From assembly GCF_023055435.1 (NCBI RefSeq), contig NW_025964372.1:46438001-46502000 (forward strand): 64,000 nt of DNA. Direction: 5' to 3'. The stretch is from Haliotis rufescens (taxonomy: Eukaryota). Position numbers and translations under genes: made by a program. Position 1 is the stretch's first letter. Each line of letters starts with the position of its first letter. Below, in pieces: positions 13,821 through 48,153 of the stretch. Below the pieces are notes generated by a model. The model was given only the letters and a program-made list of their open reading frames with translations. It was not told where the DNA came from and did not search any database.

Positions 13821-14409
13821 GATGTCAGTGTTCGGTGGTGATGTTCGCAATGACATGTGTTGATGCATAGGTGTTATTCCATTTCAGCTGTTGCTTAGGT
13901 TACTGCAGACAGTGACTATGATTGGATAATACATTGCCGCATGAGCTGGGATATGAGTGCACACGGATCCATTAATCAGGGAATTAAACACTAGGAGCAT
14001 TTGATCCCATTCCATCCAGGTAAATGCTTCATAAACAAGTGCCTATTTCTATTTCTGTTAACATACCTTCCCCCACCTTCTGTAAGCAGAGGGCTTTAAG
14101 TTTATATTGAATTATGCAGTTATGCACCAGTACTGGAATTGGTAATGTCATCGCTGTCACGGAAACAATCTCACTGTACTGATAAACTGAGTATTTGCAA
14201 AACATTGTTAATTGACGCTTTGCTCATAAGTGAGACGTATTATTTACATTTCCACTTCCTGCAATATGAAGCAAACTACGAAAATGTGTGATCTATTCAA
14301 TGCAAACATAAAAGGCAGGTGAACCTGAAAGTACATTAATGTTATGAGTGCTAATAGAATTGAATATCGATTGAGAGAAGGTGCCATCGACAGATATTTG
14401 ATATCATCA

Positions 14410-19020: not shown

Positions 19021-19184
19021 TGGTCTAAGCACTTTGATGACAATAGTGGATATAATGCAGTAATATGTTAAGAAAGTTTAATGAAAGTAATGAAGATCTG
19101 CCAACAATTTGAAGAAAATTGGGAGTTAATAGTTAATATATTGCAAATGTTAATCATCGAAAAGGTCATGTCATATACAATCCT

Positions 19185-20934: not shown

Positions 20935-21010
20935 AGGACATGTTATTTCGGCTGACGGTGTTCACACCCAGCTGGAGAAAATGGAGGCAGTAAAATGTTG
21001 GCCTACCGTA
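20935..21010 (+). mobile_element. Short Gypsy-type pol fragment
   Basis: GHVISADGVHTQLEKMEAVKCWPT resembles the LTR-retrotransposon RT C-terminal motif LGHxISxxGxxxDPxKxxAVxxWPxP. Confidence 0.55.
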
Positions 21011-26925: not shown

Positions 26926-28053
26926 TTACACACAAAACACCAGCAGGGACATCAGTGCCAGAAGCAGGAATACCCCGAACAAAACGTGGTCTGCGCGGCG
27001 GACCTTTGACGCAGACTTCACATACGAACGTTCAGTGATTTTCGTGTTTACGAGGTCGTGTTCTGGCTGTACAACTGTCTTGGTCTGAAATAGGTGACCG
27101 TTATTGCGGACGTTGAGTGTGGCCATGGTGGTGATGATAGCCAGGCAGCTCTGACAGAGGATGAGGGTCAGGTACACAGACAGTCCACACACGTCTCCAG
27201 ACTTGGGGATCGAGTCGTTGACGAAGTTCATGAACACTGCATAGGACACAAATATTGAGATGAGGTAGGACATCTTCTCTCCGGAGTCAGCTGGTAGGAG
27301 GAACACACAGGCGTTGAGCAGAGAGAGAAGAGCCATAGGAAAGATGATACTAACTATATAGAACATGCTCTTGCGTTTCAAAAAGAACTCAAACGATACC
27401 AGACTTGATATCTGTTTCATTTGGACGTCTACATTCTTGGCAAGTATGTCAACCAACTCCCATTCATTGTTCTCAATAAAGAAAGAAGGTAATCCTGTAA
27501 TAATAGAACCGGTGCTGGCAACTCCAAGATCGAAAGTATTTACAGGCGTGAACAGGATGCTACAACGCTGCTGATCAAACGGGTACCGAGTGATGTCTAT
27601 TTGACAACTGGTCTTTAAACTCTCAAGGAATTGAAGTGATGCAATTCCTTTACTGGATATCTTTGGAGATTGTTCTGAAGCCAAGGTAGCGCTGTCGATA
27701 CCGTTAGGGATAGCAATGGTCGGTATCCATACAAACTTCTCAGAGACGGTCACTTCCGTAATATTATCATAATCAGTTTTGTTCCAAGCCAGATTTGGGT
27801 CGAGCCACGTCATGCGGATACCAGCACTGAAAGTGAATATCTGCTCGGCAGCATTGAGATTGGAGATGGACATCAGCAACATACTTATGTTGACCTGTTT
27901 GTCATCGGAGAGATCAACACTGATGCCATAAGCATCAGTTTCCCCTTGGAGATATGCCTTCAGTCTTCCTAATGTCGACTCAGCGCTATCACATATACTG
28001 GCGATTGATACTATGACGACTAAGTTAAGGATTTTAGCCGGCATGTAAAACAT
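26926..28053 (-). CDS. Intronless Cys-loop channel subunit, type A copy 2, 375 aa
   Basis: Colinear paralogue of 1204-2331 with all motifs intact. Confidence 0.95.
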   Translation of the reverse strand: MFYMPAKILNLVVIVSIASICDSAESTLGRLKAYLQGETDAYGISVDLSDDKQVNISMLLMSISNLNAAEQIFTFSAGIRMTWLDPNLAWNKTDYDNITEVTVSEKFVWIPTIAIPNGIDSATLASEQSPKISSKGIASLQFLESLKTSCQIDITRYPFDQQRCSILFTPVNTFDLGVASTGSIITGLPSFFIENNEWELVDILAKNVDVQMKQISSLVSFEFFLKRKSMFYIVSIIFPMALLSLLNACVFLLPADSGEKMSYLISIFVSYAVFMNFVNDSIPKSGDVCGLSVYLTLILCQSCLAIITTMATLNVRNNGHLFQTKTVVQPEHDLVNTKITERSYVKSASKVRRADHVLFGVFLLLALMSLLVFCV

Positions 28054-31000
28054 GATTTCAGTGTTCAGTGGTGATGTTCAAAATGACAGATATTGTCAGG
28101 CAGGTGTTCTAATTTTGCTTAAATTGTGACAATGGACCTGTGAACTGGAATACGAGTCAACACGTATCACGCAATCAATAATGCTAGGCGCCTTGCGCAC
28201 ACCCATTAGGGAAAATGTAAGCGCTTTATAAACAGATTGATATTAATGATTCAATAGTAATAACTGTCCCCACCTTCATTGGACAAAGCAGTATCTCTTT
28301 ATAGCACCTACTGCAGTTACGTACAAATAATGGAGGTGGTAATGACAACAGAATGCTCAGTAATCAGTGTTTCCAAAGCGCCGTTAATATACTTTTAGTG
28401 ACAAGTACTGTATGTTTCTTTGCTTTCTGCAATATGAGTAGACCGGAAACATTTAAATGCGTCATGTCCCTGGAATGTATGTGCAACGTAAATACGCATT
28501 AATGTATTGCCAACGAATTGATTAATGCCATTGCCTGAGAATATATGTGGCATGCACTTCAATTTGTGCAAAGGAATTACACAGACAAAGCATTTAAATG
28601 AACCTGGTGCTGGCACGGACGTTACTACACTTACATACGATTAAATATGAAATTAAAGCTGGGGTTAATACAGAGTGAGTGAGTAAGTTAATATTTAACG
28701 TAACAGCGGCAATATTTCAGCTATATTATGACGAGAAGTTATTCATTAAGAATACATATATTAAGACTAAATAAAAACCTGTCATCGATGGACAGTAAAT
28801 AACTAGAATATCACAGATTAATACTTAAGACTAGCTTACAACCATAAAAAGATATCACTATATTCCACAATACAATATGAAAAAGGGCTGTAGATCGCCA
28901 GCAACTGAAGGTAGATCACCATACCCGGGGGGACTGGTTGCGAATACCAGGTATCATAACTATTTGTTAGTGATTCATTAAGAAACGCTCAAGATATAGT
29001 CGGAATTTTTCAATCCAATCTGCTTTATGCAGAGATTTCTATTGGATATTGAAAGCATTTTGTCGCTTTATTTACAGTACCTTTGCTACATGCATGGATT
29101 TACATCATGCCTTCAGCGGCTGGCGTTTGTATGTAATGTTACCCACAATTGAAATTACAAATATTCTACGCTTAAAGGAATAGTAAGCAAAATATTCTTA
29201 TGAGACGAACAAACGTTATCCTCTCAGGGGAACAATAATTTTACACTACTTCAACCCCCTTCGAGGAAATAGCCACTTACAAACTCAGATAGAAATTCAT
29301 TATACCAATTTTAAAGGTCTTTTATTTCTTACAAAACATATGATCAAAATGTATTATACAATTCTTTTTCCTTTAAAAAACAAATAATTAAAAGAGAACT
29401 AATATTTTTAAAAATATCCTTTGAAATAATTATCACTTGTGATGGAAAAATCCAACACAGTTAAGCAGGACATGCTTGATAGGGTGGTTCTCTCATCTTG
29501 GGTTAATGATCAGTGTTGTTTTACAATCACAAGAGGTGTTACAGATTTGTTGAGTGCTGCTTTTGCACAGTTCGTTGAGGAAGAATTTTTAGCCACAGTT
29601 TAACCAAGTTTTTTCGCAATATCAGATTTATCCGTTAGTGGTACATCCTCATTCTTGAAATGGTGGATGCTGGAATTGGAACTCTTACCTTGTATTTTTC
29701 TGAATCATGTTCCATACATTAGACATGGTAAGTATATTTTTAGACATCAGTTTGCCAAGACGTTGGCGTTTATTTACAATATAGGTAAAAATAAAAGAAA
29801 TGACGGTATTAAAATTATGGATCATGGGGATGGCAACGGAAATCGTGTTCAGCCATTTTCCGTGCCTTCCTTGCTTGTTTGTTTGTAGTCATTGTGGTTT
29901 GTGGATGTGTAGAATTGCAGAGGACTTTGGAATACATTCATCAGCAATTTTGCAAAGTTCATCAGAGAGTATTCGGACATGATCAGGAACGGTTGATAAA
30001 CAAATCAGGTGTTAATTTTGGTGTGTGGGAGTGACGTCCATCTCCAGGGGCTGAAACGGATTTATGAACCTCAACAGATGTTCAACAGGAGAAGGCACCG
30101 CCAAGTGTTGGAGTGTCCTGGCTTTTCTCCTCATCTGCTTTTTAGCCTGTTTTGATAAATGGGCTTCAGCCTGAAATATTTCTATTTCGGTTACAGGGTT
30201 TGGTTCTGGTTCTAAGTGGTGATATTTGATCAGAAGGTATTGATTGAAAGTTTTGTTTGGGTGGCAGATGTCGGTATCATTGGAGAGTTTTGAGAAGTCT
30301 GAATGGTGTCATTGATGGTAATTTGTCATTCTTCAACCAAGAGATAGAAGAGAGATGGTATTGTATGGAGACCATAGTTACTTTGGTTACTGAAACTGGT
30401 GAAGAAGAGACGACAGCTGAATAGCTTTTAGAAGGTGTTTGGGACGGAATGAGCAACTGTTTTGCCACGGTGTAAGAGTGAGTGAGTATGGTTTTACGCC
30501 GCTTTTAGCAATATTCCAGCAATATCACGACGGGGGACACCAGAAATGGGCTTCACACATTGTACCCATGTCGGGAATCGAACCCAGGTCCTCGGCGTGA
30601 TGAGCGAACGCTTTAACCACTAGGCTACCCGACCGCCCCCTTCTGGCAGAGAACTTCATCAAGATTATTATATAATATTCTGATAAAAAAATAGTTTGAT
30701 ATGATATGATATTTCGAAAGTATCAAGTATTCCATGCACAGGGCATGGAGTGACCAGCCGATTGATAGAATCGGGCCAATTCAACTACACATCGAGGTAT
30801 AGTAAGGATCAAAGTAGTGTGTGGGGCAAAGGGGACAGCTGTTCCTGGCTCCAGTGCCGGTAACAACTGGAATCACGTTCTCTATCGACACAGGGGCGCA
30901 ACCCACGGCAAACAGGTTGCCGAATTCGGTCGCCTCTTACGACCAGCAATGGGGTGCTGAGGACATATTCTACCCCGGGGCCTCACGTGGGCTTTTTTGC

Positions 31001-32687
31001 AGATATTCGTGCTGAGAAACATACATTTGATTTCTCAACTTTTCAGATGAACATGACATGAATACGAACATTAAACGTTCGGTAGTACAACGGGATGAAG
31101 TAGGTGAAGGTATAACTACATGCCAGGTAACCTTTACTGAGTGCCTTGCAAATCAGAATGAGGAATACTCACAGAAGACAAATATCAGATATTTAATCAG
31201 TCGGAAACTCAAGAGAATCTCTTTGATATAGCTTCGGAAACATTTAAGAACACGCTGATCCGCTCTAAACTTGATTGTGGCTCCATCATCTAAAGTGGGA
31301 CTTGTAAAACCAATTTAAAATCACTTAATACGATTCACCATCAAGGCCTGAGGCTTTGCCCTTGAGCCTTCAGATCTTCGCCAATTAATAGTTTGTATGT
31401 GGGAGCGGATGAACCATCCGTTAAACACCGTCGCATCAGATAATCTTTGCAGTATATCTATGAATTACGTTCTACTTGCTCGAATCCAGCATGTCACTGT
31501 GTTTTTCATCTGCGGCTAAAATAAATCTTGACAATATAGCCCCCACTCATCTGTTGTCTTCTCCACAATGGCATTTAGTAAACCAGAGGTGGATCTAACA
31601 TTAACTGAACTAAGGCATTTTGAAACAAATCAACTAATTTATCAACGAGAATATAATCAATAAAAAGCTTTTACAATACCTACAAATCTTTACATATAGA
31701 TCCAAGGATGTTGACAAACAATTTACATATATTTTCCGACTCTCTTTCCTGTCTTCATGCAATTAAAAATCAGTCTTCCAAACATCGACTTTTAATCGAA
31801 ATTCTTGAATGAAATAATTAATGTGCCACTGGCCAATACGGCATCATTGATTTTTCCATCACAAGGGATACGTATTTAAAATCTTCATCTATTAAGGGTC
31901 TTTATAACAGTATTAGTTCTCATTTGTTTATTGGGTTTTTAATGTATGTAGGAACACATAATTCAAAGTACATTTATTCATACCTCAGTTTTAAACGTAT
32001 TATATTTGTTTTATAGTCCCCACGGTCCCTAGAATGGTGCGTAACTTTAGTTGCTGGTGATCTATAACCCATTTATATATTGTATTGTTGAATTCATTCT
32101 TTCATATGCTCTCAGTTAGTTTAAAATCAATCGAAACTGTGTTCCTCTAGTTATTATACTTCCATCGCTAACAGGTTTCATTCAAGCTGAAAATATCTGT
32201 ATTTTAAATGGCTACGTTCTCGTTACGACATGGCTAAAATACTGCCGACGTGACGTTAAATTTCGACTCACTCACTTCCTCACTCTTTTTATAGAACTTA
32301 TATTCTGGTAACAAATTGTCCTACGGCTACCTTTTCGCAATACCTGTCTTCACCTTTAGAATAACAAAATATACATAGCGATATGATTAGGCATTAAAAT
32401 TGATGCTGTCTTCAACAAAGAGACTGTGTTCATAAGACAGGGGGTAAGTCATTCCTCATTTTAATACTTGTTAAGTTTGTTGAAACAAAATGTTTCAACA
32501 CAATCTGCTGTGAAATATCAGGTCATATCTAATCTTGACATCTGCTAAAATGTTGACAATAAAGGAATTCGTCACGTAGCAAATTGTGAAGGTCTCCAAT
32601 AGATAAAACTTATAAACCAAGCAGATGGCTCTTTTTATACTGCGCCCCTCCTACGTTTGGATTGCAGCTCAATCGCACCACAATATA

Positions 32688-33917
32688 TACTGAACAACAG
32701 TGACATTGAATAAGATTTAATGCAAAGTTATGTTTTTAACCAAGTCTGAAACAATTTCGGTTTGCAACAGATAAAAGACTCCTGTAAGTGTTCAAATGGT
32801 TTCATTTGCCATACTGACTTCAGAAAATGCGTGATTTCATAACAAAAACATGAACATGCCAAAATGTCAATTTACAAATCAATAGCTGTGCTGTGCTTTG
32901 GGATATCTGTCCATATCCGCTGTTCCTGGAGTGTCTGTGGAACACGTGGTTGACGTCGAAGGCGCCGATCCATCCCATCCGACATGTGCTCGGTTGGTGA
33001 GAGATCAGGGGAGCGAGCCGGCCAGGGGATGACGTTCACGTTGTTTTGTTGATGAGAATCCTGAACAAGTCGAGAAATATGAGGCCGGGCGTTGTCATGA
33101 CACAATGATTGACGTAGCGTTCACCTCGACGTCAGTACACTCGAATCCGTCCATCGCTGTGGCTGAGGTGAAAACGAGACTTGTCAGTGAATAGAACTTG
33201 TCCCCACTGCATTGCCGTCTAGCGTAGACGCTGTCTGCACCACTGTAGACGTGCTTGACGGTGGTTTCCTGTCGAAATGGGACGTCTGGCAGGTCTTCTG
33301 GCGACAATCCCTGCACATCTGCGACGACGACGTACAATTTGTGAAGATATTCGTCGAAGGCCAGGGCTGCTTCTTGCACTCACTGTTGCTGGCTGGAATC
33401 GATTTCGTAGGTGTGTTGTTCGAATCCAGTTGTCTTGTCGATTATTGGTTACGCGTGGCCTCCTACTCCGAGGATGGTCTCTGACTGCATTCGTCTGTTG
33501 CCATCGTTGCCATAAACACCAAATGGTGTTTCTGTGGACGTTACATTGTCTTGCAACATCACGTTGACTCGATCCTGCTTCAAGCATACCAATGGCTCGC
33601 AGACGCTCATTTTCGGACAGGCGTGGCGTTTCGTAATGTTGAATAATTGCGTAATCTGGTTGTTTTTCTGAGTGGTTGTTGTCAGCACGATGCTTAATAA
33701 TGCATATGGAATCCCGTTAACGCACATCTATTTATACCCATTCTTGGGTAGTGAAATGCATGGGGCTTGCATAAAAGTCAACTTTTGCATGGAATGCATG
33801 CTTTTCTGTAGCAGTTGCGTTTTTGTGACTTCCATACATGTACTACAATATTGAAAACCAAACTTGTTTGAAAAAACACTAAAATATTAGTGTCACAGGA
33901 ACTTTTGTTGTTGAGTA
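32688..33917 (-). mobile_element. Tc1 transposon relic (paralogous insertion)
   Basis: Same flanks as 8731-9806; retains WPARSPDLSPTEH. Confidence 0.88.
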
Positions 33918-34200
33918 TATAATATAGTGCAAAGGTGACACCTTAGAAAACATTAGGATGGGAGGGAACAGCAATGAAACTAAAAAAGCACACGGGATAA
34001 CTCTACCGGCAGTGAAACTTAATTTCTTTGAAATGGTGATCATTTGTGATTTATATGGGCTACAATTAATCTATCCCACATTGAATTACAAATAAAAGCA
34101 ACAATACTCATTCCATATCCGTAAGAAATCTCGCCAAAAAGCAGAGTCGATTCTGACAAAATCCCGATCACATGTTAATAAATCACAATCAAATAGTTAA

Positions 34201-36105
34201 AGGGGCACTGATCTAAAACAATACCCCGGGACTGGTTGTTGCCTTTGTTATTGTTCTTTCCCGTGAGTACCGCATGATATAGCAGAGACCTAGACTAGTT
34301 CGCAACCTGTGCTGCGCATTTGTCACTTTTATTGATAGTATAAGGGCGTATGGTCACATTGATCAACAAAATGAAATACAGTTTTGGAAATAATAAGGAA
34401 ATGTAGGTATCGTTGTGGGTAGCATCGGTAATGGTGACGAAGTTTTGATAAGTCACTTGCTTGGTAATTGTGCGATTTTCGTTTACACTACTTTGACTTG
34501 CTACACAAAGTAAATATTTCTCCTGAGCATTGCTTATTTTATTGTGTTTATATTTTTACAGTCAAAATGTGCAAAATTTTACACTTAGGAAATTTGTTAA
34601 ACGCCTGAATATTCAGTTATTTTACAAATTGACTGAAAAATATGTCCATCTGTATTATTATGACAACGAATTCCAAACATTTTAATGTTTAATATGATCA
34701 CCAAGAGACTGAAAAGTTACGATGAAAAATACATTTCTATATTGTTTGGCTTCTAATCCAACATAATAATATATTGTGATGTTTTTAGGCCCTATTGATC
34801 GTCTTAATTAATTTTGGTCAATCTGTTAAAGAAATGGACAGATTTTTCAGTCGAAATGACTTAAATATTCACACATTTTATAAATTGCCTGAGAGAATCA
34901 CATTTTGCAACTTGACTGTAATATACAAAGGAAAAGACTTGTGAAAACAACGTCTATCGCGCATCGAAGAATTTCCCAACCAAGACGTAGAGGAACAAGA
35001 ATGTACAAAGAAACGTTATCGATGTCACGTGTCTCTGTAACAATCAAATATTTTAAAATATATACATCGTTTCGGGATATTATAACCTGTGTTCGTTTCT
35101 GATCACTTAGATTGTTTCAGGTGTTTCACATAGGTGTCAAGTCTCATAGGTCGGCTTAGAAAGCCCACGTGACAACTATTTTCATAACGTCCACGGTTCC
35201 TAAAGAAAATTCCATTGAGTTAGATAACAATGAGCAATTAATCAACGTAGTGTCGGTTAACCCTTTGAACAAAGTATGTTGTTTTTACATCGGCACTTCA
35301 CGCAAGGATATGAGAATATTCCCTTTGTTTTAGTAAACCCAGACATGTAAATACTCACTTTTGACACTATCCACCGTGCAAGATAACAGTGGTTAATCAA
35401 TCAATGTATTTTCTGTTAATCCTTTGATGACTACGAACGATCCGCTGATTTACAAAAAAAGTAAATCAACTGATCATTCATCTCTTGCTGGGGTGCCACG
35501 TGCATATTTACATAACACACATTTCACCTCACTTCAAACCTGGATTTAGATTGAATAATTACCCCAGACACTATAAATGCCAAATGGGAAGCTTCCTCAG
35601 GTATTCGGAGTGATGCTACCACTAATTATACCTGTAATAAATTCATTAACTGAGCATCAAGTGAATGACGACAAATACGCAAGTGTAGGGTTATACCAGA
35701 AAACGTGGATGACAACAAGGGAGTAGTAATGGTATTATCGACGCAATCCGAAATCCGAAAATGCTTTCACTGCATTGATCCTTTTTTTAAACGATAACAA
35801 ATCAAGGGTGTTTCCAAATGGCGACAACCGATGATCTCCGCCGTTCTTTTTGTCTGTTTGTTTAGGCTGAAGAAATTAATAAACATGCGCCTTTGTCGAA
35901 ATCTTTATAGATCACAGTTAACCAATCAGTGTCCAAAATGGGTAAAACAAATATTGCCTCCAAGTTTATTTTGCTGTCCTTGCAGACGGTAGCCCAGTCT
36001 CTTGTCACGTTCAGTTGCGTTGCGTATCATCCGGGTGCTTACGGGGAAAAAACAATAACAAAGGCAACAACCAGTCCCGGGGAATTGCTTTAGATCAGTG
36101 CCCCT
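34201..36105. mobile_element. Kolobok-like TIR element (paralogous insertion)
   Basis: Same TIRs, TTAA and flanks; ~175 bp longer internally. Confidence 0.85.
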
Positions 36106-36973
36106 TTAAAGTACAAGTGTTCGCAAAAAGGTAAGCGTGTCGCGCGCCCGCCACAAACACATGCAAGTCAAATCAACTGTTCACAAGAAAACACACAGGA
36201 ACATGTTGCACAACACCATAAAGATAATTGCATCGGACATCATGTTTACTCATTGATGCGTCAAATTTGGAAATGTCCACATGTGACGTGATACAAACAA
36301 GAAGTACGAATAACTTTATTTAAAAAACAGAAACAGACATGGAAGAAAAGGGAATATTTGTATAAATGCTAAATGAGCTAAATTTGTAGTCCTCTGGTAT
36401 TCTGTACTCATAGACCATCTAACGTTAACGTACATGAATCTCAAATTGGATAATCCAATAAATAGCCAGGATGTAGCTACATTTATTTTCTCTTTTGATC
36501 ACAAAGCCTACCGCTGGTACATGAAAATCCGAAAACCAAATGTTTGGCCAAGATAAAATTACAATCGTTTTGTGTGTGTTTTCATGTCATGGCGGATTTG
36601 ATTATTTGCAGGTTATTAATGGTTTTGAATAGTGATGACAGTACTGCTAATCAAACTTTCTAATTTCCCAAATCATTTTAAACAACATAGTACTCACTGT
36701 AAGCACATGGTTCAGAAAGTCACATTGAAGGCAACAAGAGAGTCACACTAGCCTACACACATGCCACTGATCATAGAGTAAATAATTACTGAAGGAATCG
36801 ACGTGTCACATTAAATCACTGCAAATCCACGTTTGAAAAGCTTATCACAACGGAGGCATTCCCTAACACAGTGGGGGGGGATCGGACGTCGAGCTCCGGA
36901 CGAGTTCCTTCTTATACCCCAAACACCAGCACGGACATCATGATCAGTGCCAGGGCTCCAGACAAATGTCGCC

Positions 36974-38085
36974 TTATACACAAAACACCAGCAGGGACAT
37001 CAGTGCCAGAAGCAGGAAGACCCCGAACAAAACGTGGTCCGAGCGGCGGACCTTTGACGGACGTTCAGTGCTTTTGGGGTTTACGTTGTAGTGTTCTGGC
37101 TGTACATCTGTCTTGGTCTGAAATAGGTGACCGTTATTGCGGACGTTGAGTGTGGCCATGGTGGTGATGATAGCCAGGCAGCTCTGACAGAGGATGAGGG
37201 TCAGGTACACAGACAGTCGACAAACGTCTCCAGACTTGGGGATCGAGTCATTGACGAAGTTCATGAACACTGCATAGGACACAAATATTGAGATGAGGTA
37301 GGACATCTTCTCTCCGGAGTCAGCTGGTAGGAGGAACACACAGGCGTTGAGCAGAGAGAGAAGAGCCATAGGAAAGATGATACTAACTATATAGAACATG
37401 CTCTTGCGTTTCAAACATACTCAAACGATACCAGACTTGATATCTGTTTCATTTGGACGTCTACATTCTTGGCAAGTATGTCAACCAACTCCCATTCATT
37501 GTTCTCAATAAAGAAAGAAGGTAATCCTGTAATATTAGAACCGGTTCTGTCAACTCCAAGATCGAAAGTATTTACAGGCGTAAACAGGATGCTACATCGC
37601 TGCTGATCAAACGGGTACCGAGTGATGTCTATTTGACAACTGGTCTTGAAACTCTCAAGGAATTGAAGTGATGCAATTCCATTACTGGATATCTTTGGAG
37701 ATTGTTCTGAAGCCAAGGTAGCGCTGTCGATACCGTTAGGGATGGCAATGGTCGGTATCCATACAAACTTCTCAGAGATGGTCACTTCCGTAATATTATC
37801 ATAATCAGTTTTGTTCCAAGCCAGATTTGGGTCGAGCCACGTCATGCGGAAACCAGCACTGAAAGTGAATATCTGCTCGGCAGCATTGAGGTTGGAGATG
37901 GACATCAGCAACATACTTATGTTGACCTGTTTGTCATCGGAGAGATCAACACTGATGCCATAAGCATCAGTTTCCCCTTGGAGATATGCCTTCAGTCTTC
38001 CTAATGTCGACTCAGCGCTATCACATATACTGGCGATTGATACTATGACGACTAAGTTAAGGATTTTAGCCGGCATGTAAAACAT
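36974..38085 (-). pseudogene. Chimeric A(5')/B(3') Cys-loop gene with net -1 frameshift at the ECD/TM1 junction; encodes a 224-aa ECD-only ORF (37411-38085) plus a still-open TM1-TM4 frame (36974-37414)
   Basis: GAG TTC TTT TTG AAA of intact copies reads GAG TAT GTT TGA here. Length is 1112 nt versus 1113 expected. The C-terminus TERPSKVRRSDH and 3' flank are B-type. Confidence 0.9.
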
Positions 38086-41000
38086 GATATCAGTGTTCAG
38101 TGGTGATGTTCAAAATGACAGATATTGTCAGGCAGGTCTTTATCCATTTATAATTTTGCTTAAATTGTGACAATGGACCTGTGAACTGGAATACGAGTCA
38201 ACACGTATCACGCAATCAATAATGCTAGGCGCCTTGCGCACACCCATTAGTGAAAATGTAAGCGCTTTATAAACAGATTGATGTTAATGATTCAATAGTA
38301 ATACCTGTCCCCACCTTCATTGGACAAAGCAGTATCTCTGTATAGCACCTACTGCAGTTACGTACAAATAATGGAGGTGGTAATGACAACAGATTGCCGT
38401 GGAAAAAATCTTTTATTAAATGCTCAGTAATCAGTGTTTCCAAAGCACCATTAATATACTTTTTAGTGAAAAGTACTATATGTTTCTTTGCTTTCTGCAA
38501 TATGAGTAGACCGGAAACATTTAAATGCGTCATGTCCCTGAAATGTATGTGCAACGTAAATACGCATTAATGTATTGCCAACGAATTGATTAATGCCATT
38601 GCCTGAGAATATATGTGGCATGCACTTCAATTTGTGCAAAGGAATTACACAGACAACGCATTTAAATGAACCTGGTGCTGGCACGGACGTTACTACACTA
38701 ACATGCGATTAAATATGAAATTAAAGCTGGGGTTAATACAGAGTGAGTGAGTAAGTTAATATTTAACGTAACAGCGGCAATATTTCAGCTATATTATGAC
38801 GAGAAGTTATTCATTAAGAATACATATATTAAGACTAAATAAAAACCTGTCATCGATGGACAGTAAATAACTAGAATATCACAGATTAATACTTAAGACT
38901 AGCTTACAACCATAAAAAGATATCACTATATTCCACAATACAATATGAAAAAGGGCTGTAGATCGCCAGCAACTGAAGGTAGATCACCATACCCGGGGGG
39001 ACTGGTTGCGAATACCAGGTATCATAACTATTTGTTAGTGATTCATTAAGAAACGCTCAAGATATAGTCGGAATTTTTCAATCCAATCTGCTTTATGCAG
39101 AGATTTCTATTGGATATTGAAAGCATTTTGTCGCTTTATTTACAGTACCTTTGCTACATGCATGGATTTACATCATGCCTTCAGCGGCTGGCGTTTGTAT
39201 GTAATGTTACCCACAATTGAAATTACAAATATTCTAGGCTTAAAGGAATAGTAAGCAAAATATTCTTATGAGACGAACAAACGTTATCCTCTCAGGGGAA
39301 CAATAATTTTACACTACTTCAACCCCCTTCGAGGAAATAGCCACTTACAAACTCAGATAGAAATTCATTATACCAATTTTAAAGGTCTTTTATTTCTTAC
39401 AAAACATATGATCAAAATGTATTATACAATTCTTTTTCCTTTAAAAAACAAATAATTAAAAGAGAACTAATATTTTTAAAAATATCCTTTGAAATAATTA
39501 TCACTTGTGATGGAAAAATCCAACACAGTTAAGCAGGACATGCTTGATAGGGTGGTTCTCTCATCTTGGGTTAATGATCAGTGTTGTTTTACAATCACAA
39601 GAGGTGTTACAGATTTGTTGAGTGCTGCTTTTGCACAGTTCGTTGAGGAAGAATTTTTAGCCACAGTTTAACCAAGTTTTTTCGCAATATCAGATTTATC
39701 CGTTAGTGGTACATCCTCATTCTTGAAATGGTGGATGCTGGAATTGGAACTCTTACCTTGTATTTTTCTGAATCATGTTCCATACATTAGACATGGTAAG
39801 TATATTTTTAGACATCAGTTTGCCAAGACGTTGGCGTTTATTTACAATATAGGTAAAAATAAAAGAAATGACGGTATTAAAATTATGGATCATGGGGATG
39901 GCAACGGAAATCGTGTTCAGCCATTTTCCGTGCCTTCCTTGCTTGTTTGTTTGTAGTCATTGTGGTTTGTGGATGTGTAGAATTGCAGAGGACTTTGGAA
40001 TACATTCATCAGCAATTTTGCAAAGTTCATCAGAGAGTATTCGGACATGATCAGGAACGGTTGATAAACAAATCAGGTGTTAATTTTGGTGTGTGGGAGT
40101 GACGTCCATCTCCAGGGGCTGAAACGGATTTATGAACCTCAACAGATGTTCAACAGGAGAAGGCACCGCCAAGTGTTGGAGTGTCCTGGCTTTTCTCCTC
40201 ATCTGCTTTTTAGCCTGTTTTGATAAATGGGCTTCAGCCTGAAATATTTCTATTTCGGTTACAGGGTTTGGTTCTGGTTCTAAGTGGTGATATTTGATCA
40301 GAAGGTATTGATTGAAAGTTTTGTTTGGGTGGCAGATGTCGGTATCATTGGAGAGTTTTGAGAAGTCTGAATGGTGTCATTGATGGTAATTTGTCATTCT
40401 TCAACCAAGAGATAGAAGAGAGATGGTATTGTATGGAGACCATAGTTACTTTGGTTACTGAAACTGGTGAAGAAGAGACGACAGCTGAATAGCTTTTAGA
40501 AGGTGTTTGGGACGGAATGAGCAACTGTTTTGCCACGGTGTAAGAGTGAGTGAGTATGGTTTTACGCCGCTTTTAGCAATATTCCAGCAATATCACGACG
40601 GGGGACACCAGAAATGGGCTTCACACATTGTACCCATGTCGGGAATCGAACCCAGGTCCTCGGCGTGATGAGCGAACGCTTTAACCACTAGGCTACCCGA
40701 CCGCCCCCTTCTGGCAGAGAACTTCATCAAGATTATTATATAATATTCTGATAAAAAAATAGTTTGATATGATATGATATTTCGAAAGTATCAAGTATTC
40801 CATGCACAGGGCATGGAGTGACCAGCCGATTGATAGAATCGGGCCAATTCAACTACACATCGAGGTATAGTAAGGATCAAAGTAGTGTGTGGGGCAAAGG
40901 GGACAGCTGTTCCTGGCTCCAGTGCCGGTAACAACTGGAATCACGTTCTCTATCGACACAGGGGCGCAACCCACGGCAAACAGGTTGCCGAATTCGGTCG

Positions 41001-42755
41001 CCTCTTACGACCAGCAATGGGGTGCTGAGGACATATTCTACCCCGGGGCCTCACGTGGGCTTTTTTGCAGATATTCGTGCTGAGAAACATACATTTGATT
41101 TCTCAACTTTTCAGATGAACATGACATGAATACGAACATTAAACGTTCGGTAGTACAACGGGATGAAGTAGGTGAAGGTATAACTACATGCCAGGTAACC
41201 TTTACTGAGTGCCTTGCAAATCAGAATGAGGAATACTCACAGAAGACAAATATCAGATATTTAATCAGTCGGAAACTCAAGAGAATCTCTTTGATATAGC
41301 TTCGGAAACATTTAAGAACACGCTGATCCGCTCTAAACTTGATTGTGGCTCCATCATCTAAAGTGGGACTTGTAAAACCAATTTAAAATCACTTAATACG
41401 ATTCACCATCAAGGCCTGAGGCTTTGCCCTTGAGCCTTCAGATCTTCGCCAATTAATAGTTTGTATGTGGGAGCGGATGAACCATCCGTTAAACACCGTC
41501 GCATCAGATAATCTTTGCAGTATATCTATGAATTACGTTCTACTTGCTCGAATCCAGCATGTCACTGTGTTTTTCATCTGCGGCTAAAATAAATCTTGAC
41601 AATATAGCCCCCACTCATCTGTTGTCTTCTCCACAATGGCATTTAGTAAACCAGAGGTGGATCTAACATTAACTGAACTAAGGCATTTTGAAACAAATCA
41701 ACTAATTTATCAACGAGAATATAATCAATAAAAAGCTTTTACAATACCTACAAATCTTTACATATAGATCCAAGGATGTTGACAAACAATTTACATATAT
41801 TTTCCGACTCTCTTTCCTGTCTTCATGCAATTAAAAATCAGTCTTCCAAACATCGACTTTTAATCGAAATTCTTGAATGAAATAATTAATGTGCCACTGG
41901 CCAATACGGCATCATTGATTTTTCCATCACAAGGGATACGTATTTAAAATCTTCATCTATTAAGGGTCTTTATAACAGTATTAGTTCTCATTTGTTTATT
42001 GGGTTTTTAATGTATGTAGGAACACATAATTCAAAGTACATTTATTCATACCTCAGTTTTAAACGTATTATATTTGTTTTATAGTCCCCACGGTCCCTAG
42101 AATGGTGCGTAACTTTAGTTGCTGGTGATCTATAACCCATTTATATATTGTATTGTTGAATTCATTCTTTCATATGCTCTCAGTTAGTTTAAAATCAATC
42201 GAAACTGTGTTCCTCTAGTTATTATACTTCCATCGCTAACAGGTTTCATTCAAGCTGAAAATATCTGTATTTTAAATGGCTACGTTCTCGTTACGACATG
42301 GCTAAAATACTGCCGACGTGACGTTAAATTTCGACTCACTCACTTCCTCACTCTTTTTATAGAACTTATATTCTGGTAACAAATTGTCCTACGGCTACCT
42401 TTTCGCAATACCTGTCTTCACCTTTAGAATAACAAAATATACATAGCGATATGATTAGGCATTAAAATTGATGCTGTCTTCAACAAAGAGACTGTGTTCA
42501 TAAGACAGGGGGTAAGTCATTCCTCATTTTAATACTTGTTAAGTTTGTTGAAACAAAATGTTTCAACACAATCTGCTGTGAAATATCAGGTCATATCTAA
42601 TCTTGACATCTGCTAAAATGTTGACAATAAAGGAATTCGTCACGTAGCAAATTGTGAAGGTCTCCAATAGATAAAACTTATAAACCAAGCAGATGGCTCT
42701 TTTTATACTGCGCCCCTCCTACGTTTGGATTGCAGCTCAATCGCACCACAATATA

Positions 42756-43985
42756 TACTGAACAACAGTGACATTGAATAAGATTTAATGCAAAGTTATG
42801 TTTTTAACCAAGTCTGAAACAATTTCGGTTTGCAACAGATAAAAGACTCCTGTAAGTGTTCAAATGGTTTCATTTGCCATACTGACTTCAGAAAATGCGT
42901 GATTTCATAACAAAAACATGAACATGCCAAAATGTCAATTTACAAATCAATAGCTGTGCTGTGCTTTGGGATATCTGTCCATATCCGCTGTTCCTGGAGT
43001 GTCTGTGGAACACGTGGTTGACGTCGAAGGCGCCGATCCATCCCATCCGACATGTGCTCGGTTGGTGAGAGATCAGGGGAGCGAGCCGGCCAGGGGATGA
43101 CGTTCACGTTGTTTTGTTGATGAGAATCCTGAACAAGTCGAGAAATATGAGGCCGGGCGTTGTCATGACACAATGATTGACGTAGCGTTCACCTCGACGT
43201 CAGTACACTCGAATCCGTCCATCGCTGTGGCTGAGGTGAAAACGAGACTCGTCAGTGAATAGAACTTGTCCCCACTGCATTGCCGTCTAGCGTAGACGCT
43301 GTCTGCACCACTGTAGACGTGCTTGACGGTGGTTTCCTGTCGAAATGGGACGTCTGGCAGGTCTTCTGGCGACAATCCCTGCACATCTGCGACGACGACG
43401 TACAATTTGTGAAGATATTCGTCGAAGGCCAGGGATGCTTCTTGCACTCACTGTTGCTGGCTGGAATCGATTTCGTAGGTGTGTTGTTCGAATCCAGTTG
43501 TCTTGTCGATTATTGGTTACGCGTGGCCTCCTACTCCGAGGATGGTCTCTGACTGCATTCGTCTGTTGCCATCGTTGCCATAAACACCAAATGGTGTTTC
43601 TGTGGACGTTAAATTGTCTTGCAACATCACGTTGACTCGATCCTGCTTCAAGCATACCAATGGCTCGCAGACGCTCATTTTCGGACAGGCGTGGCGTTTC
43701 GTAATGTTGAATAATTGCGTAATCTGGTTGTTTTTCTGAGTGGTTGTTGTCAGCACGATGCTTAATAATGCATATGGAATCCCGTTAACGCACATCTATT
43801 TATACCCATTCTTGGGTAGTGAAATGCATGGGGCTTGCATAAAAGTCAACTTTTGCATGGAATGCATGCTTTTCTGTAGCAGTTGCGTTTTTGTGACTTC
43901 CATACATGTACTACAATATTGAAAACCAAACTTGTTTGAAAAAACACTAAAATATTAGTGTCACAGGAACTTTTGTTGTTGAGTA
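42756..43985 (-). mobile_element. Tc1 transposon relic (paralogous insertion)
   Basis: +10,068 copy of 32688-33917. Confidence 0.88.
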
Positions 43986-44268
43986 TATAATATAGTGCAA
44001 AGGTGACACCTTAGAAAACATTAGGATGGGAGGGAACAGCAATGAAACTAAAAAAGCACACGGGATAACTCTACCGGCAGTGAAACTTAATTTCTTTGAA
44101 ATGGTGATCATTTGTGATTTATATGGGCTACAATTAATCTATCCCACATTGAATTACAAATAAAAGCAACAATACTCATTCCATATCCGTAAGAAATCTC
44201 GCCAAAAAGCAGAGTCGATTCTGACAAAATCCCGATCACATGTTAATAAATCACAATCAAATAGTTAA

Positions 44269-46173
44269 AGGGGCACTGATCTAAAACAATACCCCGGGAC
44301 TGGTTGTTGCCTTTGTTATTGTTCTTTCCCGTGAGTACCGCATGATATAGCAGAGACCTAGACTAGTTCGCAACCTGTGCTGCGCATTTGTCACTTTTAT
44401 TGATAGTATAAGGGCGTATGGTCACATTGATCAACAAAATGAAATACAGTTTTGGAAATAATAAGGAAATGTAGGTATCGTTGTGGGTAGCATCGGTAAT
44501 GGTGACGAAGTTTTGATAAGTCACTTGCTTGGTAATTGTGCGATTTTCGTTTACACTACTTTGACTTGCTACACAAAGTAAATATTTCTCCTGAGCATTG
44601 CTTATTTTATTGTGTTTATATTTTTACAGTCAAAATGTGCAAAATTTTACACTTAGGAAATTTGTTAAACGCCTGAATATTCAGTTATTTTACAAATTGA
44701 CTGAAAAATATGTCCATCTGTATTATTATGACAACGAATTCAAAACATTTTAATGTTTAATATGATCACCAAGAGACTGAAAAGTTACGATGAAAAATAC
44801 ATTTCTATATTGTTTGGCTTCTAATCCAACATAATAATATATTGTGATGTTTTTAGGCCCTATTGATCGTCTTAATTAATTTTGGTCAATCTGTTAAAGA
44901 AATGGACAGATTTTTCAGTCGAAATGACTTAAATATTCACACATTTTATAAATTGCCTGAGAGAATCACATTTTGCAACTTGACTGTAATATACAATGGA
45001 AAAGACTTGTGAAAACAACGTCTATCGCGCATCGAAGAATTTCCCAACCAAGACGTAGAGGAACAAGAATGTACAAAGAAACGTTATCGATGTCACGTGT
45101 CTCTGTAACAATCAAATATTTTAAAATATATACATCGTTTCGGGATATTATAACCTGTGTTCGTTTCTGATCACTTAGATTGTTTCAGGTGTTTCACATA
45201 GGTGTCAAGTCTCATAGGTCGGCTTAGAAAGCCCACGTGACAACTATTTTCATAACGTCCACGGTTCCTAAAGAAAATTCCATTGAGTTAGATAACAATG
45301 AGCAATTAATCAACGTAGTGTCGGTTAACCCTTTGAACAAAGTATGTTGTTTTTACATCGGCACTTCACGCAAGGATATGAGAATATTCCCTTTGTTTTA
45401 GTAAACCCAGACATGTAAATACTCACTTTTGACACTATCCACCGTGCAAGATAACAGTGGTTAATCAATCAATGTATTTTCTGTTAATCCTTTGATGACT
45501 ACGAACGATCCGCTGATTTACAAAAAAAGTAAATCAACTGATCATTCATCTCTTGCTGGGGTGCCACGTGCATATTTACATAACACACATTTCACCTCAC
45601 TTCAAACCTGGATTTAGATTGAATAATTACCCCAGACACTATAAATGCCAAATGGGAAGCTTCCTCAGGTATTCGGAGTGATGCTACCACTAATTATACC
45701 TGTAATAAATTCATTAACTGAGCATCAAGTGAATGACGACAAATACGCAAGTGTAGGGTTATACCAGAAAACGTGGATGACAACAAGGGAGTAGTAATGG
45801 TATTATCGACGCAATCCGAAATCCGAAAATGCTTTCACTGCATTGATCCTTTTTTTAAACGATAACAAATCAAGGGTGTTTCCAAATGGCGACAACCGAT
45901 GATCTCCGCCGTTCTTTTTGTCTGTTTGTTTAGGCTGAAGAAATTAATAAACATGCGCCTTTGTCGAAATCTTTATAGATCACAGTTAACCAATCAGTGT
46001 CCAAAATGGGTAAAACAAATATTGCCTCCAAGTTTATTTTGCTGTCCTTGCAGACGGTAGCCCAGTCTCTTGTCACGTTCAGTTGCGTTGCGTATCATCC
46101 GGGTGCTTACGGGGAAAAAACAATAACAAAGGCAACAACCAGTCCCGGGGAATTGCTTTAGATCAGTGCCCCT
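44269..46173. mobile_element. Kolobok-like TIR element (paralogous insertion)
   Basis: +10,068 copy. Confidence 0.85.
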
Positions 46174-47041
46174 TTAAAGTACAAGTGTTCGCAAAAAGGT
46201 AAGCGTGTCGCGCGCCCGCCACAAACACATGCAAGTCAAATCAACTGTTCACAAGAAAACACACAGGAACATGTTGCACAACACCATAAAGATAATTGCA
46301 TCGGACATCATGTTTACTCATTGATGCGTCAAATTTGGAAATGTCCACATGTGACGTGATACAAACAAGAAGTACGAATAACTTTATTTAAAAAACAGAA
46401 ACAGACATGGAAGAAAAGGGAATATTTGTATAAATGCTAAATGAGCTAAATTTGTAGTCCTCTGGTATTCTGTACTCATAGACCATCTAACGTTAACGTA
46501 CATGAATCTCAAATTGGATAATCCAATAAATAGCCAGGATGTAGCTACATTTATTTTCTCTTTTGATCACAAAGCCTACCGCTGGTACATGAAAATCCGA
46601 AAACCAAATGTTTGGCAAAGATAAAATTACAATCGTTTTGTGTGTGTTTTCATGTCATGGCGGATTTGATTATTTGCAGGTTATTAATGGTTTTGAATAG
46701 TGATGACAGTACTGCTAATCAAACTTTCTAATTTCCCAAATCATTTTAAACAACATAGTACTCACTGTAAGCACATGGTTCAGAAAGTCACATTGAAGGC
46801 AACAAGAGAGTCACACTAGCCTACACACATGCCACTGATCATAGAGTAAATAATTACTGAAGGAATCGACGTGTCACATTAAATCACTGCAAATCCACGT
46901 TTGAAAAGCTTATCACAACGGAGGCATTCCCTAACACAGTGGGGGGGGATCGGACGTCGAGCTCCGGACGAGTTCCTTCTTATACCCCAAACACCAGCAC
47001 GGACATCATGATCAGTGCCAGGGCTCCAGACAAATGTCGCC

Positions 47042-48153
47042 TTATACACAAAACACCAGCAGGGACATCAGTGCCAGAAGCAGGAAGACCCCGAACAAAA
47101 CGTGGTCCGAGCGGCGGACCTTTGACGGACGTTCAGTGCTTTTGGGGTTTACGTTGTAGTGTTCTGGCTGTACATCTGTCTTGGTCTGAAATAGGTGACC
47201 GTTATTGCGGACGTTGAGTGTGGCCATGGTGGTGATGATAGCCAGGCAGCTCTGACAGAGGATGAGGGTCAGGTACACAGACAGTCGACAAACGTCTCCA
47301 GACTTGGGGATCGAGTCATTGACGAAGTTCATGAACACTGCATAGGACACAAATATTGAGATGAGGTAGGACATCTTCTCTCCGGAGTCAGCTGGTAGGA
47401 GGAACACACAGGCGTTGAGCAGAGAGAGAAGAGCCATAGGAAAGATGATACTAACTATATAGAACATGCTCTTGCGTTTCAAACATACTCAAACGATACC
47501 AGACTTGATATCTGTTTCATTTGGACGTCTACATTCTTGGCAAGTATGTCAACCAACTCCCATTCATTGTTCTCAATAAAGAAAGAAGGTAATCCTGTAA
47601 TATTAGAACCGGTTCTGTCAACTCCAAGATCGAAAGTATTTACAGGCGTAAACAGGATGCTACATCGCTGCTGATCAAACGGGTACCGAGTGATGTCTAT
47701 TTGACAACTGGTCTTGAAACTCTCAAGGAATTGAAGTGATGCAATTCCATTACTGGATATCTTTGGAGATTGTTCTGAAGCCAAGGTAGCGCTGTCGATA
47801 CCGTTAGGGATGGCAATGGTCGGTATCCATACAAACTTCTCAGAGATGGTCACTTCCGTAATATTATCATAATCAGTTTTGTTCCAAGCCAGATTTGGGT
47901 CGAGCCACGTCATGCGGAAACCAGCACTGAAAGTGAATATCTGCTCGGCAGCATTGAGGTTGGAGATGGACATCAGCAACATACTTATGTTGACCTGTTT
48001 GTCATCGGAGAGATCAACACTGATGCCATAAGCATCAGTTTCCCCTTGGAGATATGCCTTCAGTCTTCCTAATGTCGACTCAGCGCTATCACATATACTG
48101 GCGATTGATACTATGACGACTAAGTTAAGGATTTTAGCCGGCATGTAAAACAT
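47042..48153 (-). pseudogene. Second copy of the frameshifted A/B chimera (224-aa ECD ORF 47479-48153; TM frame 47042-47482)
   Basis: Identical translations to 36974-38085, offset exactly 10,068 bp. Confidence 0.9.

What the first reader, a model, noticed from the sequence alone, without database searches (positions are those of the whole stretch)
37411..38085. Frameshift at the ECD/TM1 boundary yields a predicted secreted AChBP-like binding protein, present in two copies
Seen: TTC TTT TTG became TAT GTT TGA, a one-base deletion plus at least two substitutions rather than a simple homopolymer slip. The stop falls at the end of beta10 (...SLVSFEYV*). The 224-aa product keeps the signal peptide, Cys-loop and whole ligand-binding domain but no TM segment, and sits behind an intact A-type upstream region. 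The same lesion is at 47479-48153. Established: molluscan AChBPs are secreted ECD-only pentamers of about this size, and genes without downstream introns avoid exon-junction-dependent NMD. Inference: this may be the birth of a soluble decoy or ligand-carrier protein, or a dominant-negative subunit, rather than a dead pseudogene. It may equally be a recent neutral loss.
Basis: partly seen in the sequence, partly recalled or inferred. Interest (0 to 1): 0.78.

Follow-up and report, generated by a model that had tools for sequence, protein, structure and literature searches.

The report
Young frameshifted abalone channel gene, duplicated
One recently broken copy of an abalone nicotinic-receptor-like channel gene has been doubled by a tandem duplication; it could in principle encode a secreted binding domain, but nothing yet shows it is more than a newborn pseudogene.

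Summary
Both ORFs (37411-38085, 47479-48153, minus strand) encode an identical 224-aa signal-peptide plus Cys-loop ligand-binding domain, ended by the same lesion: one base lost and two changed within five bases.

The two copies are one event. They lie in a 10,068-base tandem duplication with 18 mismatches in 10,729 bases and none within 2,082 bases around the gene.

The gene is a recombinant. It has an A-type promoter and binding half, and a B-type pore half and 3' flank. The lesion sits inside the 248-base crossover interval. The out-of-frame pore ORF and the upstream region are untouched, so the loss is very recent.

"AChBP-like" is architecture only:
- All five acetylcholine-box aromatics and the vicinal cysteines are absent.
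- The nearest relatives by sequence and by fold are channel subunits.
- No ECD-only relative was found.

Independent support is lacking. Contigs of three DNA runs read the intact version at the lesion, but collapsed contigs cannot show absence. Transcription is unproven.

Best reading: a nascent pseudogene (about 0.7). A newborn secreted protein is not excluded (about 0.08).

The scan has noted this receptor family on other DNA of this genome, including another cluster with a broken copy.

The parts
37411..38085 (-). g4 head: 224-aa ORF (signal peptide-like N-terminus, Cys-loop, whole ligand-binding domain) ending in TGA
   Evidence: (PF02931 E 7.2e-30)
37411..37422 (-). The lesion and new stop. 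Compared with all 12 other local paralogues, one base is lost and two are changed within five bases (cds 666-670). TGA lies at 37411-37413.
36974..37414 (-). g4 tail: pore half (M1-M4), 146 codons still open but now out of frame. It is B-type (g2/L004-like).
   Evidence: (PF02932 E 2.8e-12)
47479..48153 (-). g5 head: second copy of the same 224-aa ORF, identical in sequence
47042..47482 (-). g5 tail: second copy of the out-of-frame pore ORF
28416..38483 (.). First 10,068-base unit of the tandem duplication: A-type upstream region, A-B spacer with a Tc1/mariner-like remnant, and the recombinant gene g4
   Evidence: (18 mismatches between 28416-39144 and the stretch 10,068 further on)
38484..48551 (.). 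Second 10,068-base unit, carrying g5. The repeat runs on to about 49212.
37251..37498 (-). Crossover interval (cds 588-835). The gene is A-type up to cds 587 and B-type from cds 836. The lesion lies inside this interval.
34000..36973 (-). 3' flank of g4. It is B-type: 95-96% identical to the 3' flank of g2 (9889-12710), with no match to the flanks of g1 or g3.
38086..40500 (-). Upstream region of g4. It is A-type: 97.9% to that of g3 and 92-98% to that of g1, with no match to those of g2 or g6.
37324..37685 (-). The 362-base GT..AG 'intron' that the public gene model P0019 uses to step over the lesion. It removes the Cys-loop and M1.
   Evidence: One contig of run X17 crosses the donor unspliced.
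26926..28053 (-). g3, the nearest intact A-type paralogue (375 aa). Its ECD is 98.3% identical to that of g4.
12711..13868 (-). g2, an intact B-type paralogue (385 aa). Its pore half is 98.4% identical to that of g4.

Best explanation
g4 (36974-38085) and g5 (47042-48153) are one young recombinant gene present twice. An A-type promoter and ligand-binding half are joined to a B-type (g2-like) pore half and 3' flank. This is the product expected from unequal crossing-over between neighbouring A and B genes in a tandem array whose mid-gene region is nearly identical in all copies.

Inside the 248-base interval where the join must lie, a clustered lesion shifts the frame. One base is lost and two are changed within five bases. 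The result is TGA two codons before the pre-M1 LKRK. The lesion arose once. The 10,068-base unit carrying it was then doubled by a further unequal exchange.

Nothing else in the gene is damaged, which is what a very recent loss looks like. Most likely it is a nascent pseudogene, a redundant by-product of array recombination. If it is transcribed, the mRNA would encode a 224-aa orphan extracellular domain with a signal peptide.

Shown here: the lesion, the duplication, the mosaic structure, the intact flanks and the missing acetylcholine site. Inferred: the neutral loss, the order of events, and any link between the recombination and the lesion.
For: - Lesion and ORFs.
- One event, not two: 18 mismatches in 10,729 bases at offset 10,068, none between 36550 and 38631. 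The lesion 23-mer occurs at only 2 places in the 1.33-Gb genome.
- Youth: the 146-codon pore ORF is open and identical in M1-M3 to intact paralogues. Only 4 point changes are private to the gene: 1 synonymous, plus I184N, D>Y and T>P.
- Mosaic: A-type at all informative sites up to cds 587 and B-type from 836. The 3' flank is g2-like at 95-96%. The upstream region is g3/g1-like at 92-98%.
- No sign of a new selective regime: pN/pS of g4 against intact A-types is 0.48-0.77 in the ECD and 0.31-0.42 in the tail. Intact pairs give 0.46-0.72 and 0.06-0.32.
- No conserved ECD-only relative: 21 of 21 hits to the 224-aa query carry both Pfam domains. The exact ORF is not in the 15-billion-protein collection.
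- No acetylcholine site: at the alpha7 positions of the loop A Tyr, loop B Trp, loop C Tyr-x-Cys-Cys and second Tyr, and loop D Trp, the family has Pro, Val, Met-x-Gln-Ile, a gap, and Gly.
- Context in print: intronless tandem nAChR-like expansions with LBD-only models and degenerated copies are described in molluscs (PMC6896357, passages and Table 1 read). Abalone already have dedicated AChBP and ACCBP genes (PMC3423370, passages read, citing Huang et al. 2009, which I did not see).
Against: - Broken copies are rare in this family here. Of 109 scored matches, only 4 rows have internal stops, and 2 of those are this gene's two copies. A neutral wreck is therefore not the default state.
- The stop falls exactly where an AChBP-type product would end. 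About 10-15 of 375 codons would do this, so roughly a 3-4% coincidence for a random stop (my estimate).
- Promoter, signal peptide, sequons and Cys-loop are all intact, and the private I184N change creates a further N-I-T sequon.
- One 172-base contig of run X17, labelled 'RNA?' as a guess, is identical to g4. Every one of the 12 other local paralogues differs from it by at least 4 bases. This may mean the gene is transcribed.
- A single-exon gene escapes exon-junction-dependent NMD (established knowledge).
- None of these points shows function.
Confidence: 0.7

Rival explanations
1. Newborn functional secreted protein. The truncated gene is expressed and its 224-aa product is secreted as a soluble, probably pentameric, binding protein for an unknown ligand. 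This would be the same route that presumably gave AChBP. The doubling of the unit would then reflect dosage selection.
For: - The ORF keeps the N-terminal signal-like segment, four N-x-S/T sequons, the Cys-loop and all ten strands.
- The upstream region is intact.
- There is a possible transcript fragment.
- The gene is present twice.
- Secreted ECD-only relatives of this superfamily exist in molluscs, abalone included (PMC3423370, passages read).
Against: - The two copies are one event.
- No time has passed for selection to act.
- No ECD-only homologue was found.
- The acetylcholine box is absent.
- The Cys-loop keeps the receptor-type Y-P-F-D tip that faces the membrane domain in channels. 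From recall, isolated receptor ECDs with this loop express and dissolve poorly.
- The lesion was not seen in three other DNA runs, though that test is weak.
Confidence: 0.08
2. Dominant-negative or assembly-modulating fragment. The ECD-only chain is made but stays in the ER, joins full-length A/B subunits through its assembly interfaces, and lowers the number of working channels.
For: - The ECD is 96% identical to that of g3, so it would fit the same interfaces.
- Partial-duplicate subunits that modulate receptors are known for human alpha7. A CHRNA7-FAM7A chain appears among the PDB hits. Its negative action is recalled, not tested.
Against: No expression data exist. More than 100 paralogues dilute any effect. 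Such an allele would more likely be mildly harmful than kept.
Confidence: 0.05
3. Assembly artefact. Either the lesion, or the second copy of the unit, does not exist in the animal.
For: - The lesion is seen only in this assembly.
- In X1, X7 (same organism label) and X11 (another label), the only contig across it reads the intact version: 49.4 of 49.4, 163.8 of 163.8 and 37.7 of 37.7 depth.
- The best share of sampled words in any run is 0.84.
- Near-identical 10-kb tandem units are hard to assemble.
Against: - A one-base loss plus two substitutions is not a typical consensus error.
- Other alleles private to g4 are present in X1 and X7 (37535: 0 other letters of depth 25 and 69.7), so the gene itself is real.
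- The contig test cannot show absence, because the intact 24-mer has 5 copies against 2 for the lesion.
- A published red abalone reference of the same size and piece count was built from 50.8-fold HiFi reads with N50 15.8 kb, longer than the unit. It reports 1.37% heterozygosity, far above the 0.1-0.2% between the units, so two haplotypes laid in tandem are unlikely (PMC9709998, passages read). I did not establish that G000 is that assembly.
Confidence: 0.08
4. The gene still makes a channel subunit, either by splicing around the lesion as in the public model P0019, or by ribosomal frameshifting or reinitiation.
For: - A GT..AG pair bounds a 362-base segment whose removal restores the frame, and the public annotation uses it for both copies.
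- An ATG in the pore frame lies about a dozen bases after the stop.
Against: - The spliced product lacks the Cys-loop, loops B, C and F, and M1, so it cannot be a working subunit.
- The same GT and AG exist in intact single-exon paralogues.
- No such joint appeared, and the X17 contig crosses the donor unspliced.
- There is no slippery heptamer at GTT TGA AAC.
Confidence: 0.02

Closest known systems
Molluscan acetylcholine-binding proteins (AChBP) and the related ACCBP of pearl oyster and abalone
   Same: The predicted product has the same architecture: a signal peptide plus one Cys-loop-receptor extracellular domain of about 200-225 residues ending after strand beta10, with no membrane segment.
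   Different: - It is not a relative of AChBP beyond the superfamily. The best sequence and fold matches are nAChR and 5-HT3A subunits, and no AChBP is among the 60 and 42 rows shown.
- It lacks the aromatic box and the loop C vicinal cysteines.
- It keeps a receptor-type Cys-loop.
- It is days old in evolutionary terms and has no known orthologue, expression or secretion.
Expanded intronless, tandemly arrayed nAChR-like genes of molluscs (Jiao et al. 2019, PMC6896357)
   Same: Single-exon genes with PF02931 plus PF02932, in tandem arrays, lineage-specific, with a divergent binding site. That paper's Table 1 lists LBD-only models (4-34 per lophotrochozoan genome) and mentions degenerated array members. 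The parent family here has at least 105 loci in this genome.
   Different: Here the origin of one LBD-only form can be read base by base: an A/B recombinant with a clustered frameshift at the ECD/M1 border, then doubled. The paper does not cover Haliotis in the passages I read, and its supplements were not seen.
Human CHRFAM7A (dup-alpha7), a partial duplicate of a Cys-loop subunit gene
   Same: It is a young, lineage-specific, structurally incomplete duplicate of a receptor subunit gene produced by segmental duplication and recombination. It is discussed as a modulator rather than a channel (recalled; a chain of it is among the PDB hits).
   Different: dup-alpha7 keeps the pore domain and lacks part of the ECD. 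The abalone gene keeps the ECD and loses the pore domain.
Cephalopod chemotactile receptors (nAChR-like sensory channels)
   Same: They are nicotinic-like subunits that have lost the acetylcholine site, are expanded in a mollusc lineage, and are candidate or proven chemosensors. I saw search listings and abstracts only. Earlier scan notes propose this for the abalone arrays.
   Different: Those are full-length channels. Nothing here tests a sensory role, and the finding concerns a truncated copy.

Membership tests
Cys-loop (pentameric) ligand-gated ion channel subunit | Neur_chan_LBD domain with the C-x13-C Cys-loop | tested here: met
   PF02931 E 7.2e-30 for the 224-aa ORF. CQIDITRYPFDQQRC is present. 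The fold matches nAChR and 5-HT3A ECDs at TM-score 0.70-0.75.
Cys-loop (pentameric) ligand-gated ion channel subunit | Four-helix pore domain in the same reading frame as the ECD | tested here: not met
   PF02932 is matched only by the separate 146-codon ORF in another frame. Intact paralogues g1, g2, g3 and g6 have both domains in one ORF.
AChBP (secreted acetylcholine-binding protein) | ORF of signal peptide plus ECD only, with no membrane segment | tested here: met
   The 224-aa ORF ends two residues before pre-M1. The signal peptide is inferred from the hydrophobic N-terminus; no predictor was run.
AChBP (secreted acetylcholine-binding protein) | Aromatic box (loop A Tyr, loop B Trp, two loop C Tyr, loop D Trp) and loop C vicinal Cys-Cys | tested here: not met
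   Aligned with alpha7-type proteins P0040 and P0056, the positions read Pro, Val, Met, gap and Gly, and Cys-Cys reads Gln-Ile. Which residues make up the box is recalled.
AChBP (secreted acetylcholine-binding protein) | Closest relatives are AChBPs, or an ECD-only gene conserved in other species | tested here: not met
   21 of 21 relatives carry both domains, and the nearest is a 375-aa H. cracherodii subunit at 94%. No AChBP is among the 60 best PDB sequences. The contig of organism B reads the intact junction (weak).
AChBP (secreted acetylcholine-binding protein) | Secreted, soluble homopentamer that binds ligand | not testable with these tools
   This needs expression, secretion and oligomer assays.
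Young (unitary-type) pseudogene in a tandem array | Disabling lesion relative to intact close paralogues | tested here: met
   The frameshift and TGA are private to g4/g5 among 13 local sequences.
Young (unitary-type) pseudogene in a tandem array | Relaxed constraint after the lesion | tested here: inconclusive
   There are only 4 private point changes, and pN/pS lies within the range of intact pairs.
Young (unitary-type) pseudogene in a tandem array | No or little expression | tested here: inconclusive
   No listed holder is on record as RNA. One 172-base g4-identical contig lies in a run guessed to be RNA.

The most novel reading that the evidence does not exclude
A Cys-loop receptor gene has been caught at the moment it becomes a secreted binding protein. 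Array recombination created an A-head/B-tail gene, and the repair scar at the join cut it exactly at the ECD/M1 border. The resulting soluble orphan ECD is expressed from an intact promoter and is already being amplified. This would be a live example of the route by which AChBP-type proteins arise from channels.
Probability: 0.08. Interest if true: 0.7.

Novelty: new member of a known kind. Interest (0 to 1): 0.25.

Why it matters
If the truncated gene proved to be expressed, secreted and kept in the population, it would show step by step how a soluble binding protein is born from an ion-channel gene. That question has only been inferred backwards from AChBP.

As it stands, the practical value is smaller. 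The two public gene models for these loci (246 aa, "alpha-10-like") are artefacts that splice around a frameshift. These loci are better annotated as one duplicated, very young disabled gene.

The locus also gives a clean example of how unequal crossing-over between alternating A and B genes builds chimeric copies in these arrays.

Tried and rejected
Steps that led nowhere, and ideas I rejected:

- Recoding. I read the site for a -1 slippery heptamer or a homopolymer. GTT TGA AAC has neither, so I rejected recoding.
- Splicing as in P0019. The GT..AG pair exists, but no joint was seen. The one possible RNA contig is unspliced at the donor. The product would lack the Cys-loop and M1. Rejected.
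- Independent DNA evidence for the lesion. Read laying showed only the intact version. I do not count this as absence, because the runs are collapsed contigs and the intact junction has 5 genomic copies against 2.
- Metagenome scans. The lesion 23-mer gave 0 matches and the intact 24-mer used as a control also gave 0. The collection holds no abalone copy, so this is uninformative.
- Exact look-ups. The 224-aa, 221-aa and 146-aa ORFs are not in the collection.
- Other species' loci.
- Selection tests. Counts are too small.
- Deriving the lesion from the g6-type junction (TTC TAT TTG) by conversion. No simpler path exists, so I rejected it by inspection.
- Lesion as a recombination scar. This is kept only as an inference. 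The crossover interval covers 248 of 1,112 bases, so chance alone gives 22%.
- Supplements. I did not ask for the supplements of PMC6896357, which may list LBD-only genes.

Full report
WHAT IS THERE

The window is G000:C594:46438001-46502000 of a 1.33-Gb, 615-piece genome. The nearest named proteins are from Haliotis. A 375-aa H. cracherodii protein is 95% identical to g3, and several H. rufescens models lie on a contig of 54,236,743 bases, which is the length of the window's contig.

The window holds six single-exon, minus-strand genes of one Cys-loop receptor family:
- g1: 1204-2331
- g2: 12711-13868
- g3: 26926-28053
- g4: 36974-38085
- g5: 47042-48153
- g6: 58937-60097

Four of them are intact, at 375-386 aa, with PF02931 plus PF02932. 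They belong to a 14-gene cluster on this contig and to a family with 109 scored matches out of 369 candidates in the genome. Only 4 of those rows have internal stops, and two of the four are g4 and g5.

THE OBSERVATION

ORFs of 224 aa lie at 37411-38085 and 47479-48153.

At the junction, 4 of 6 copies read GAG TTC T(T/A)T TTG AAA CGC, and g4 and g5 read GAG TAT GTT TGA AAC GC. This is one base lost and two changed within five bases. Among 13 distinct local paralogue sequences these three positions are private to g4/g5.

The product keeps:
- the hydrophobic N-terminus shared with intact paralogues;
- the C-x13-C loop;
- the whole PF02931 match (E 7.2e-30).

Aligned with alpha7-type subunits, it ends two residues before the pre-M1 LKRK. 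In an AlphaFold model (mean pLDDT 75.6, pTM 0.70) the last strand is residues 218-223.

Behind the stop, 146 codons of pore domain remain open in the other frame (PF02932, E 2.8e-12).

TWO COPIES ARE ONE EVENT

The stretch 28416-39144 matches the stretch 10,068 bases further on with 18 mismatches. Twelve lie up to 38632 and six lie in the last 150 bases. None lies between 36550 and 38631. The g4 and g5 coding sequences are identical. The lesion 23-mer occurs only at these two places in the genome. The second copy therefore adds no independent support for retention.

WHAT THE GENE IS

g4 is a recombinant.
- At sites that tell A-type genes (g1, g3, L003) from B-type genes (g2, L004), it is A-type at all informative sites up to cds 587 and B-type from cds 836 on.
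- ECD identity is 98.3% to g3 and 79.2% to g2. Tail identity is 98.4% to g2, 98.8% to L004 and 96.5% to g3.
- Its 3' flank (34000-36973) matches that of g2 at 95-96% and does not match those of g1 or g3.
- Its upstream 2.4 kb matches those of g3 (97.9%) and g1 (92-98%) and not those of g2 or g6.

This is the product expected from unequal exchange between neighbouring A and B genes in the mid-gene region that all copies share.

The lesion (cds 666-670) lies inside the 248-base interval in which the exchange must have happened. By chance that would occur 22% of the time (248 of 1,112 bases). A link between the recombination and the clustered lesion is therefore only an inference.

HOW OLD

Apart from the lesion, only four point changes are private to the gene:
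- one synonymous change;
- I184N, which makes an N-I-T sequon;
- D>Y and T>P, both in the M3-M4 loop.

pN/pS of g4 against intact A-type genes is 0.48-0.77 for the ECD and 0.31-0.42 for the tail. Intact pairs give 0.46-0.72 and 0.06-0.32. The counts are too small to detect any change of regime. The gene looks as it would the day after the mutation.

IS IT AChBP-LIKE

Only in architecture.
- The five aromatic-box positions, as they stand in alpha7-type proteins P0040 and P0056, read Pro, Val, Met, gap and Gly. The loop C Cys-Cys reads Gln-Ile. Which residues form the box is recalled.
- By sequence, the best of 219 PDB matches are 5-HT3A and nAChR subunits (E about 1e-18), and no AChBP is among the 60 shown.
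- By fold, the best matches are nAChR beta2, Torpedo and 5-HT3A ECDs (TM-score 0.70-0.75), and no AChBP is among the 42 rows listed out of at least 500 matches.
- A search with the 224-aa product found 21 proteins. All 21 carry both Pfam domains, and the only one under 290 aa is the public model of this same gene.
- Abalone already have AChBP and ACCBP genes, according to PMC3423370 (passages read), which cites Huang et al. 2009 (not seen).
- The Cys-loop keeps the receptor-type Y-P-F-D tip. From recall, isolated receptor ECDs with such loops are poorly soluble.

INDEPENDENT DATA

No listed holder of the stretch is on record as RNA.

I laid contigs of two DNA runs with the genome's organism label (X1, X7), one with another label (X11) and one guessed to be RNA (X17) on 36400-38800.
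- In X1, X7 and X11 the single contig across the lesion (37355-37498) reads the intact version: 49.4 of 49.4, 163.8 of 163.8 and 37.7 of 37.7 depth.
- I do not read this as absence. These are collapsed contigs, and the intact junction 24-mer has five genomic copies against two for the lesion. The flanks are identical in g1-g3.
- The g4-private allele at 37535 is present in X1 and X7 (0 other letters of depth 25 and 69.7) and is replaced by the ancestral letter in X11. So the g4-type gene exists in other individuals.
- X17 holds one 172-base contig (37557-37728, depth 4.3) identical to g4. Each of the 12 other local paralogues differs from it by at least 4 bases. If X17 is RNA, the gene is transcribed at a low level. 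The contig does not reach the lesion.

Metagenome scans found neither the lesion nor the intact control.

THE PUBLIC ANNOTATION

P0019 (246 aa, "alpha-10-like", two accession numbers for one sequence) is the model of g4 and g5. It removes cds 401-762 (window 37324-37685, GT..AG, 362 bases) and so steps over the frameshift, at the cost of the Cys-loop and M1. No such joint appeared, and the X17 contig crosses the donor unspliced. I sent no joined sequence to any search. A script joined the two pieces once to confirm that they give P0019.

ARTEFACT?

The lesion is not of the kind that consensus errors make. A published red abalone assembly of the same size (616 scaffolds, 1.33 Gb) used 50.8-fold HiFi reads with N50 15.8 kb and reports 1.37% heterozygosity (PMC9709998, passages read).

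If G000 is of that kind, reads span the 10-kb unit. The 0.1-0.2% difference between the units is also far below the difference expected between haplotypes. I did not establish which assembly G000 is. I leave 0.08 for an artefact.

VERDICT

The most likely reading is a very young disabled gene. It is a redundant A/B recombinant that lost its frame at or soon after its birth and was then doubled with its 10-kb unit (0.7).

A newborn secreted orphan ECD (0.08) or a dominant-negative fragment (0.05) is not excluded. In their favour:
- broken copies are rare in this family here;
- the stop falls in the roughly 3-4% of the gene where a complete, TM-free ECD results;
- all expression signals are intact.

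Molluscan nAChR-like expansions with LBD-only models and degenerate array members are in print (PMC6896357, passages and Table 1 read). Earlier notes of this scan describe the same orphan family elsewhere in this genome, including a cluster with one broken gene. The finding is therefore a new member of a known kind.

Noticed in passing
window 36974-38085 and 47042-48153, with flanks 34000-40500: g4/g5 are A-head/B-tail recombinants. They have an A-type promoter and ECD, and a g2-like pore half and 3' flank. The array order is A B A (A/B) (A/B) B, and with the two genes to the left of the window it is A B A B A ..., so the recombinant sits where a B gene is expected.
   Followed up: yes
window 37324-37685 (and 47392-47753): The public 246-aa gene models for both copies use a 362-base GT..AG 'intron' that only serves to bypass the frameshift. 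The same sites exist unused in intact single-exon paralogues.
   Followed up: yes
all six genes, pore halves (e.g. 12711-13150, 36974-37414): The pore half is far more alike between A and B genes (94-99%) than the ECD (79-80%). Whether it reflects gene conversion or constraint was not separated.
   Followed up: partly
window 9103-9471, 33219-33587, 43287-43655 (minus strand): Each A-B spacer carries a 122-aa ORF with weak matches to Tc3-type transposase HTH domains (PF01498, E 2.5e-6, below the Pfam cut-off). This is a Tc1/mariner-like remnant copied along with the unit.
   Followed up: partly
window 17267-17662 (+): A reverse-transcriptase fragment (PF00078, E 6.6e-16) lies in the B-A spacer between g2 and g3. 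It is a retroelement remnant.
   Followed up: partly
window 38668-38800: Contig depth rises from about 30 to 1,800-7,600 in X1 and to 5,000-21,000 in X7. This points to a high-copy repeat about 600 bases upstream of g4, present upstream of g3 and g5 too.
   Followed up: no
window 36468 and 37223: At both places all three DNA runs (X1, X7, X11) read another letter than the assembly in every contig laid (A>G and A>C). At 37223 the contig depth is several-fold that of contigs nearby, so that contig is probably shared with paralogues. 36468 may be an allele private to the assembled units.
   Followed up: no
G000:C79:31898669-31899625 and G000:C445:47467077-47467673: These are the only other family matches with an internal stop among the 109 scored (one TAA, one TGA). 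They were not examined for where the stop falls relative to the ECD/M1 border.
   Followed up: no
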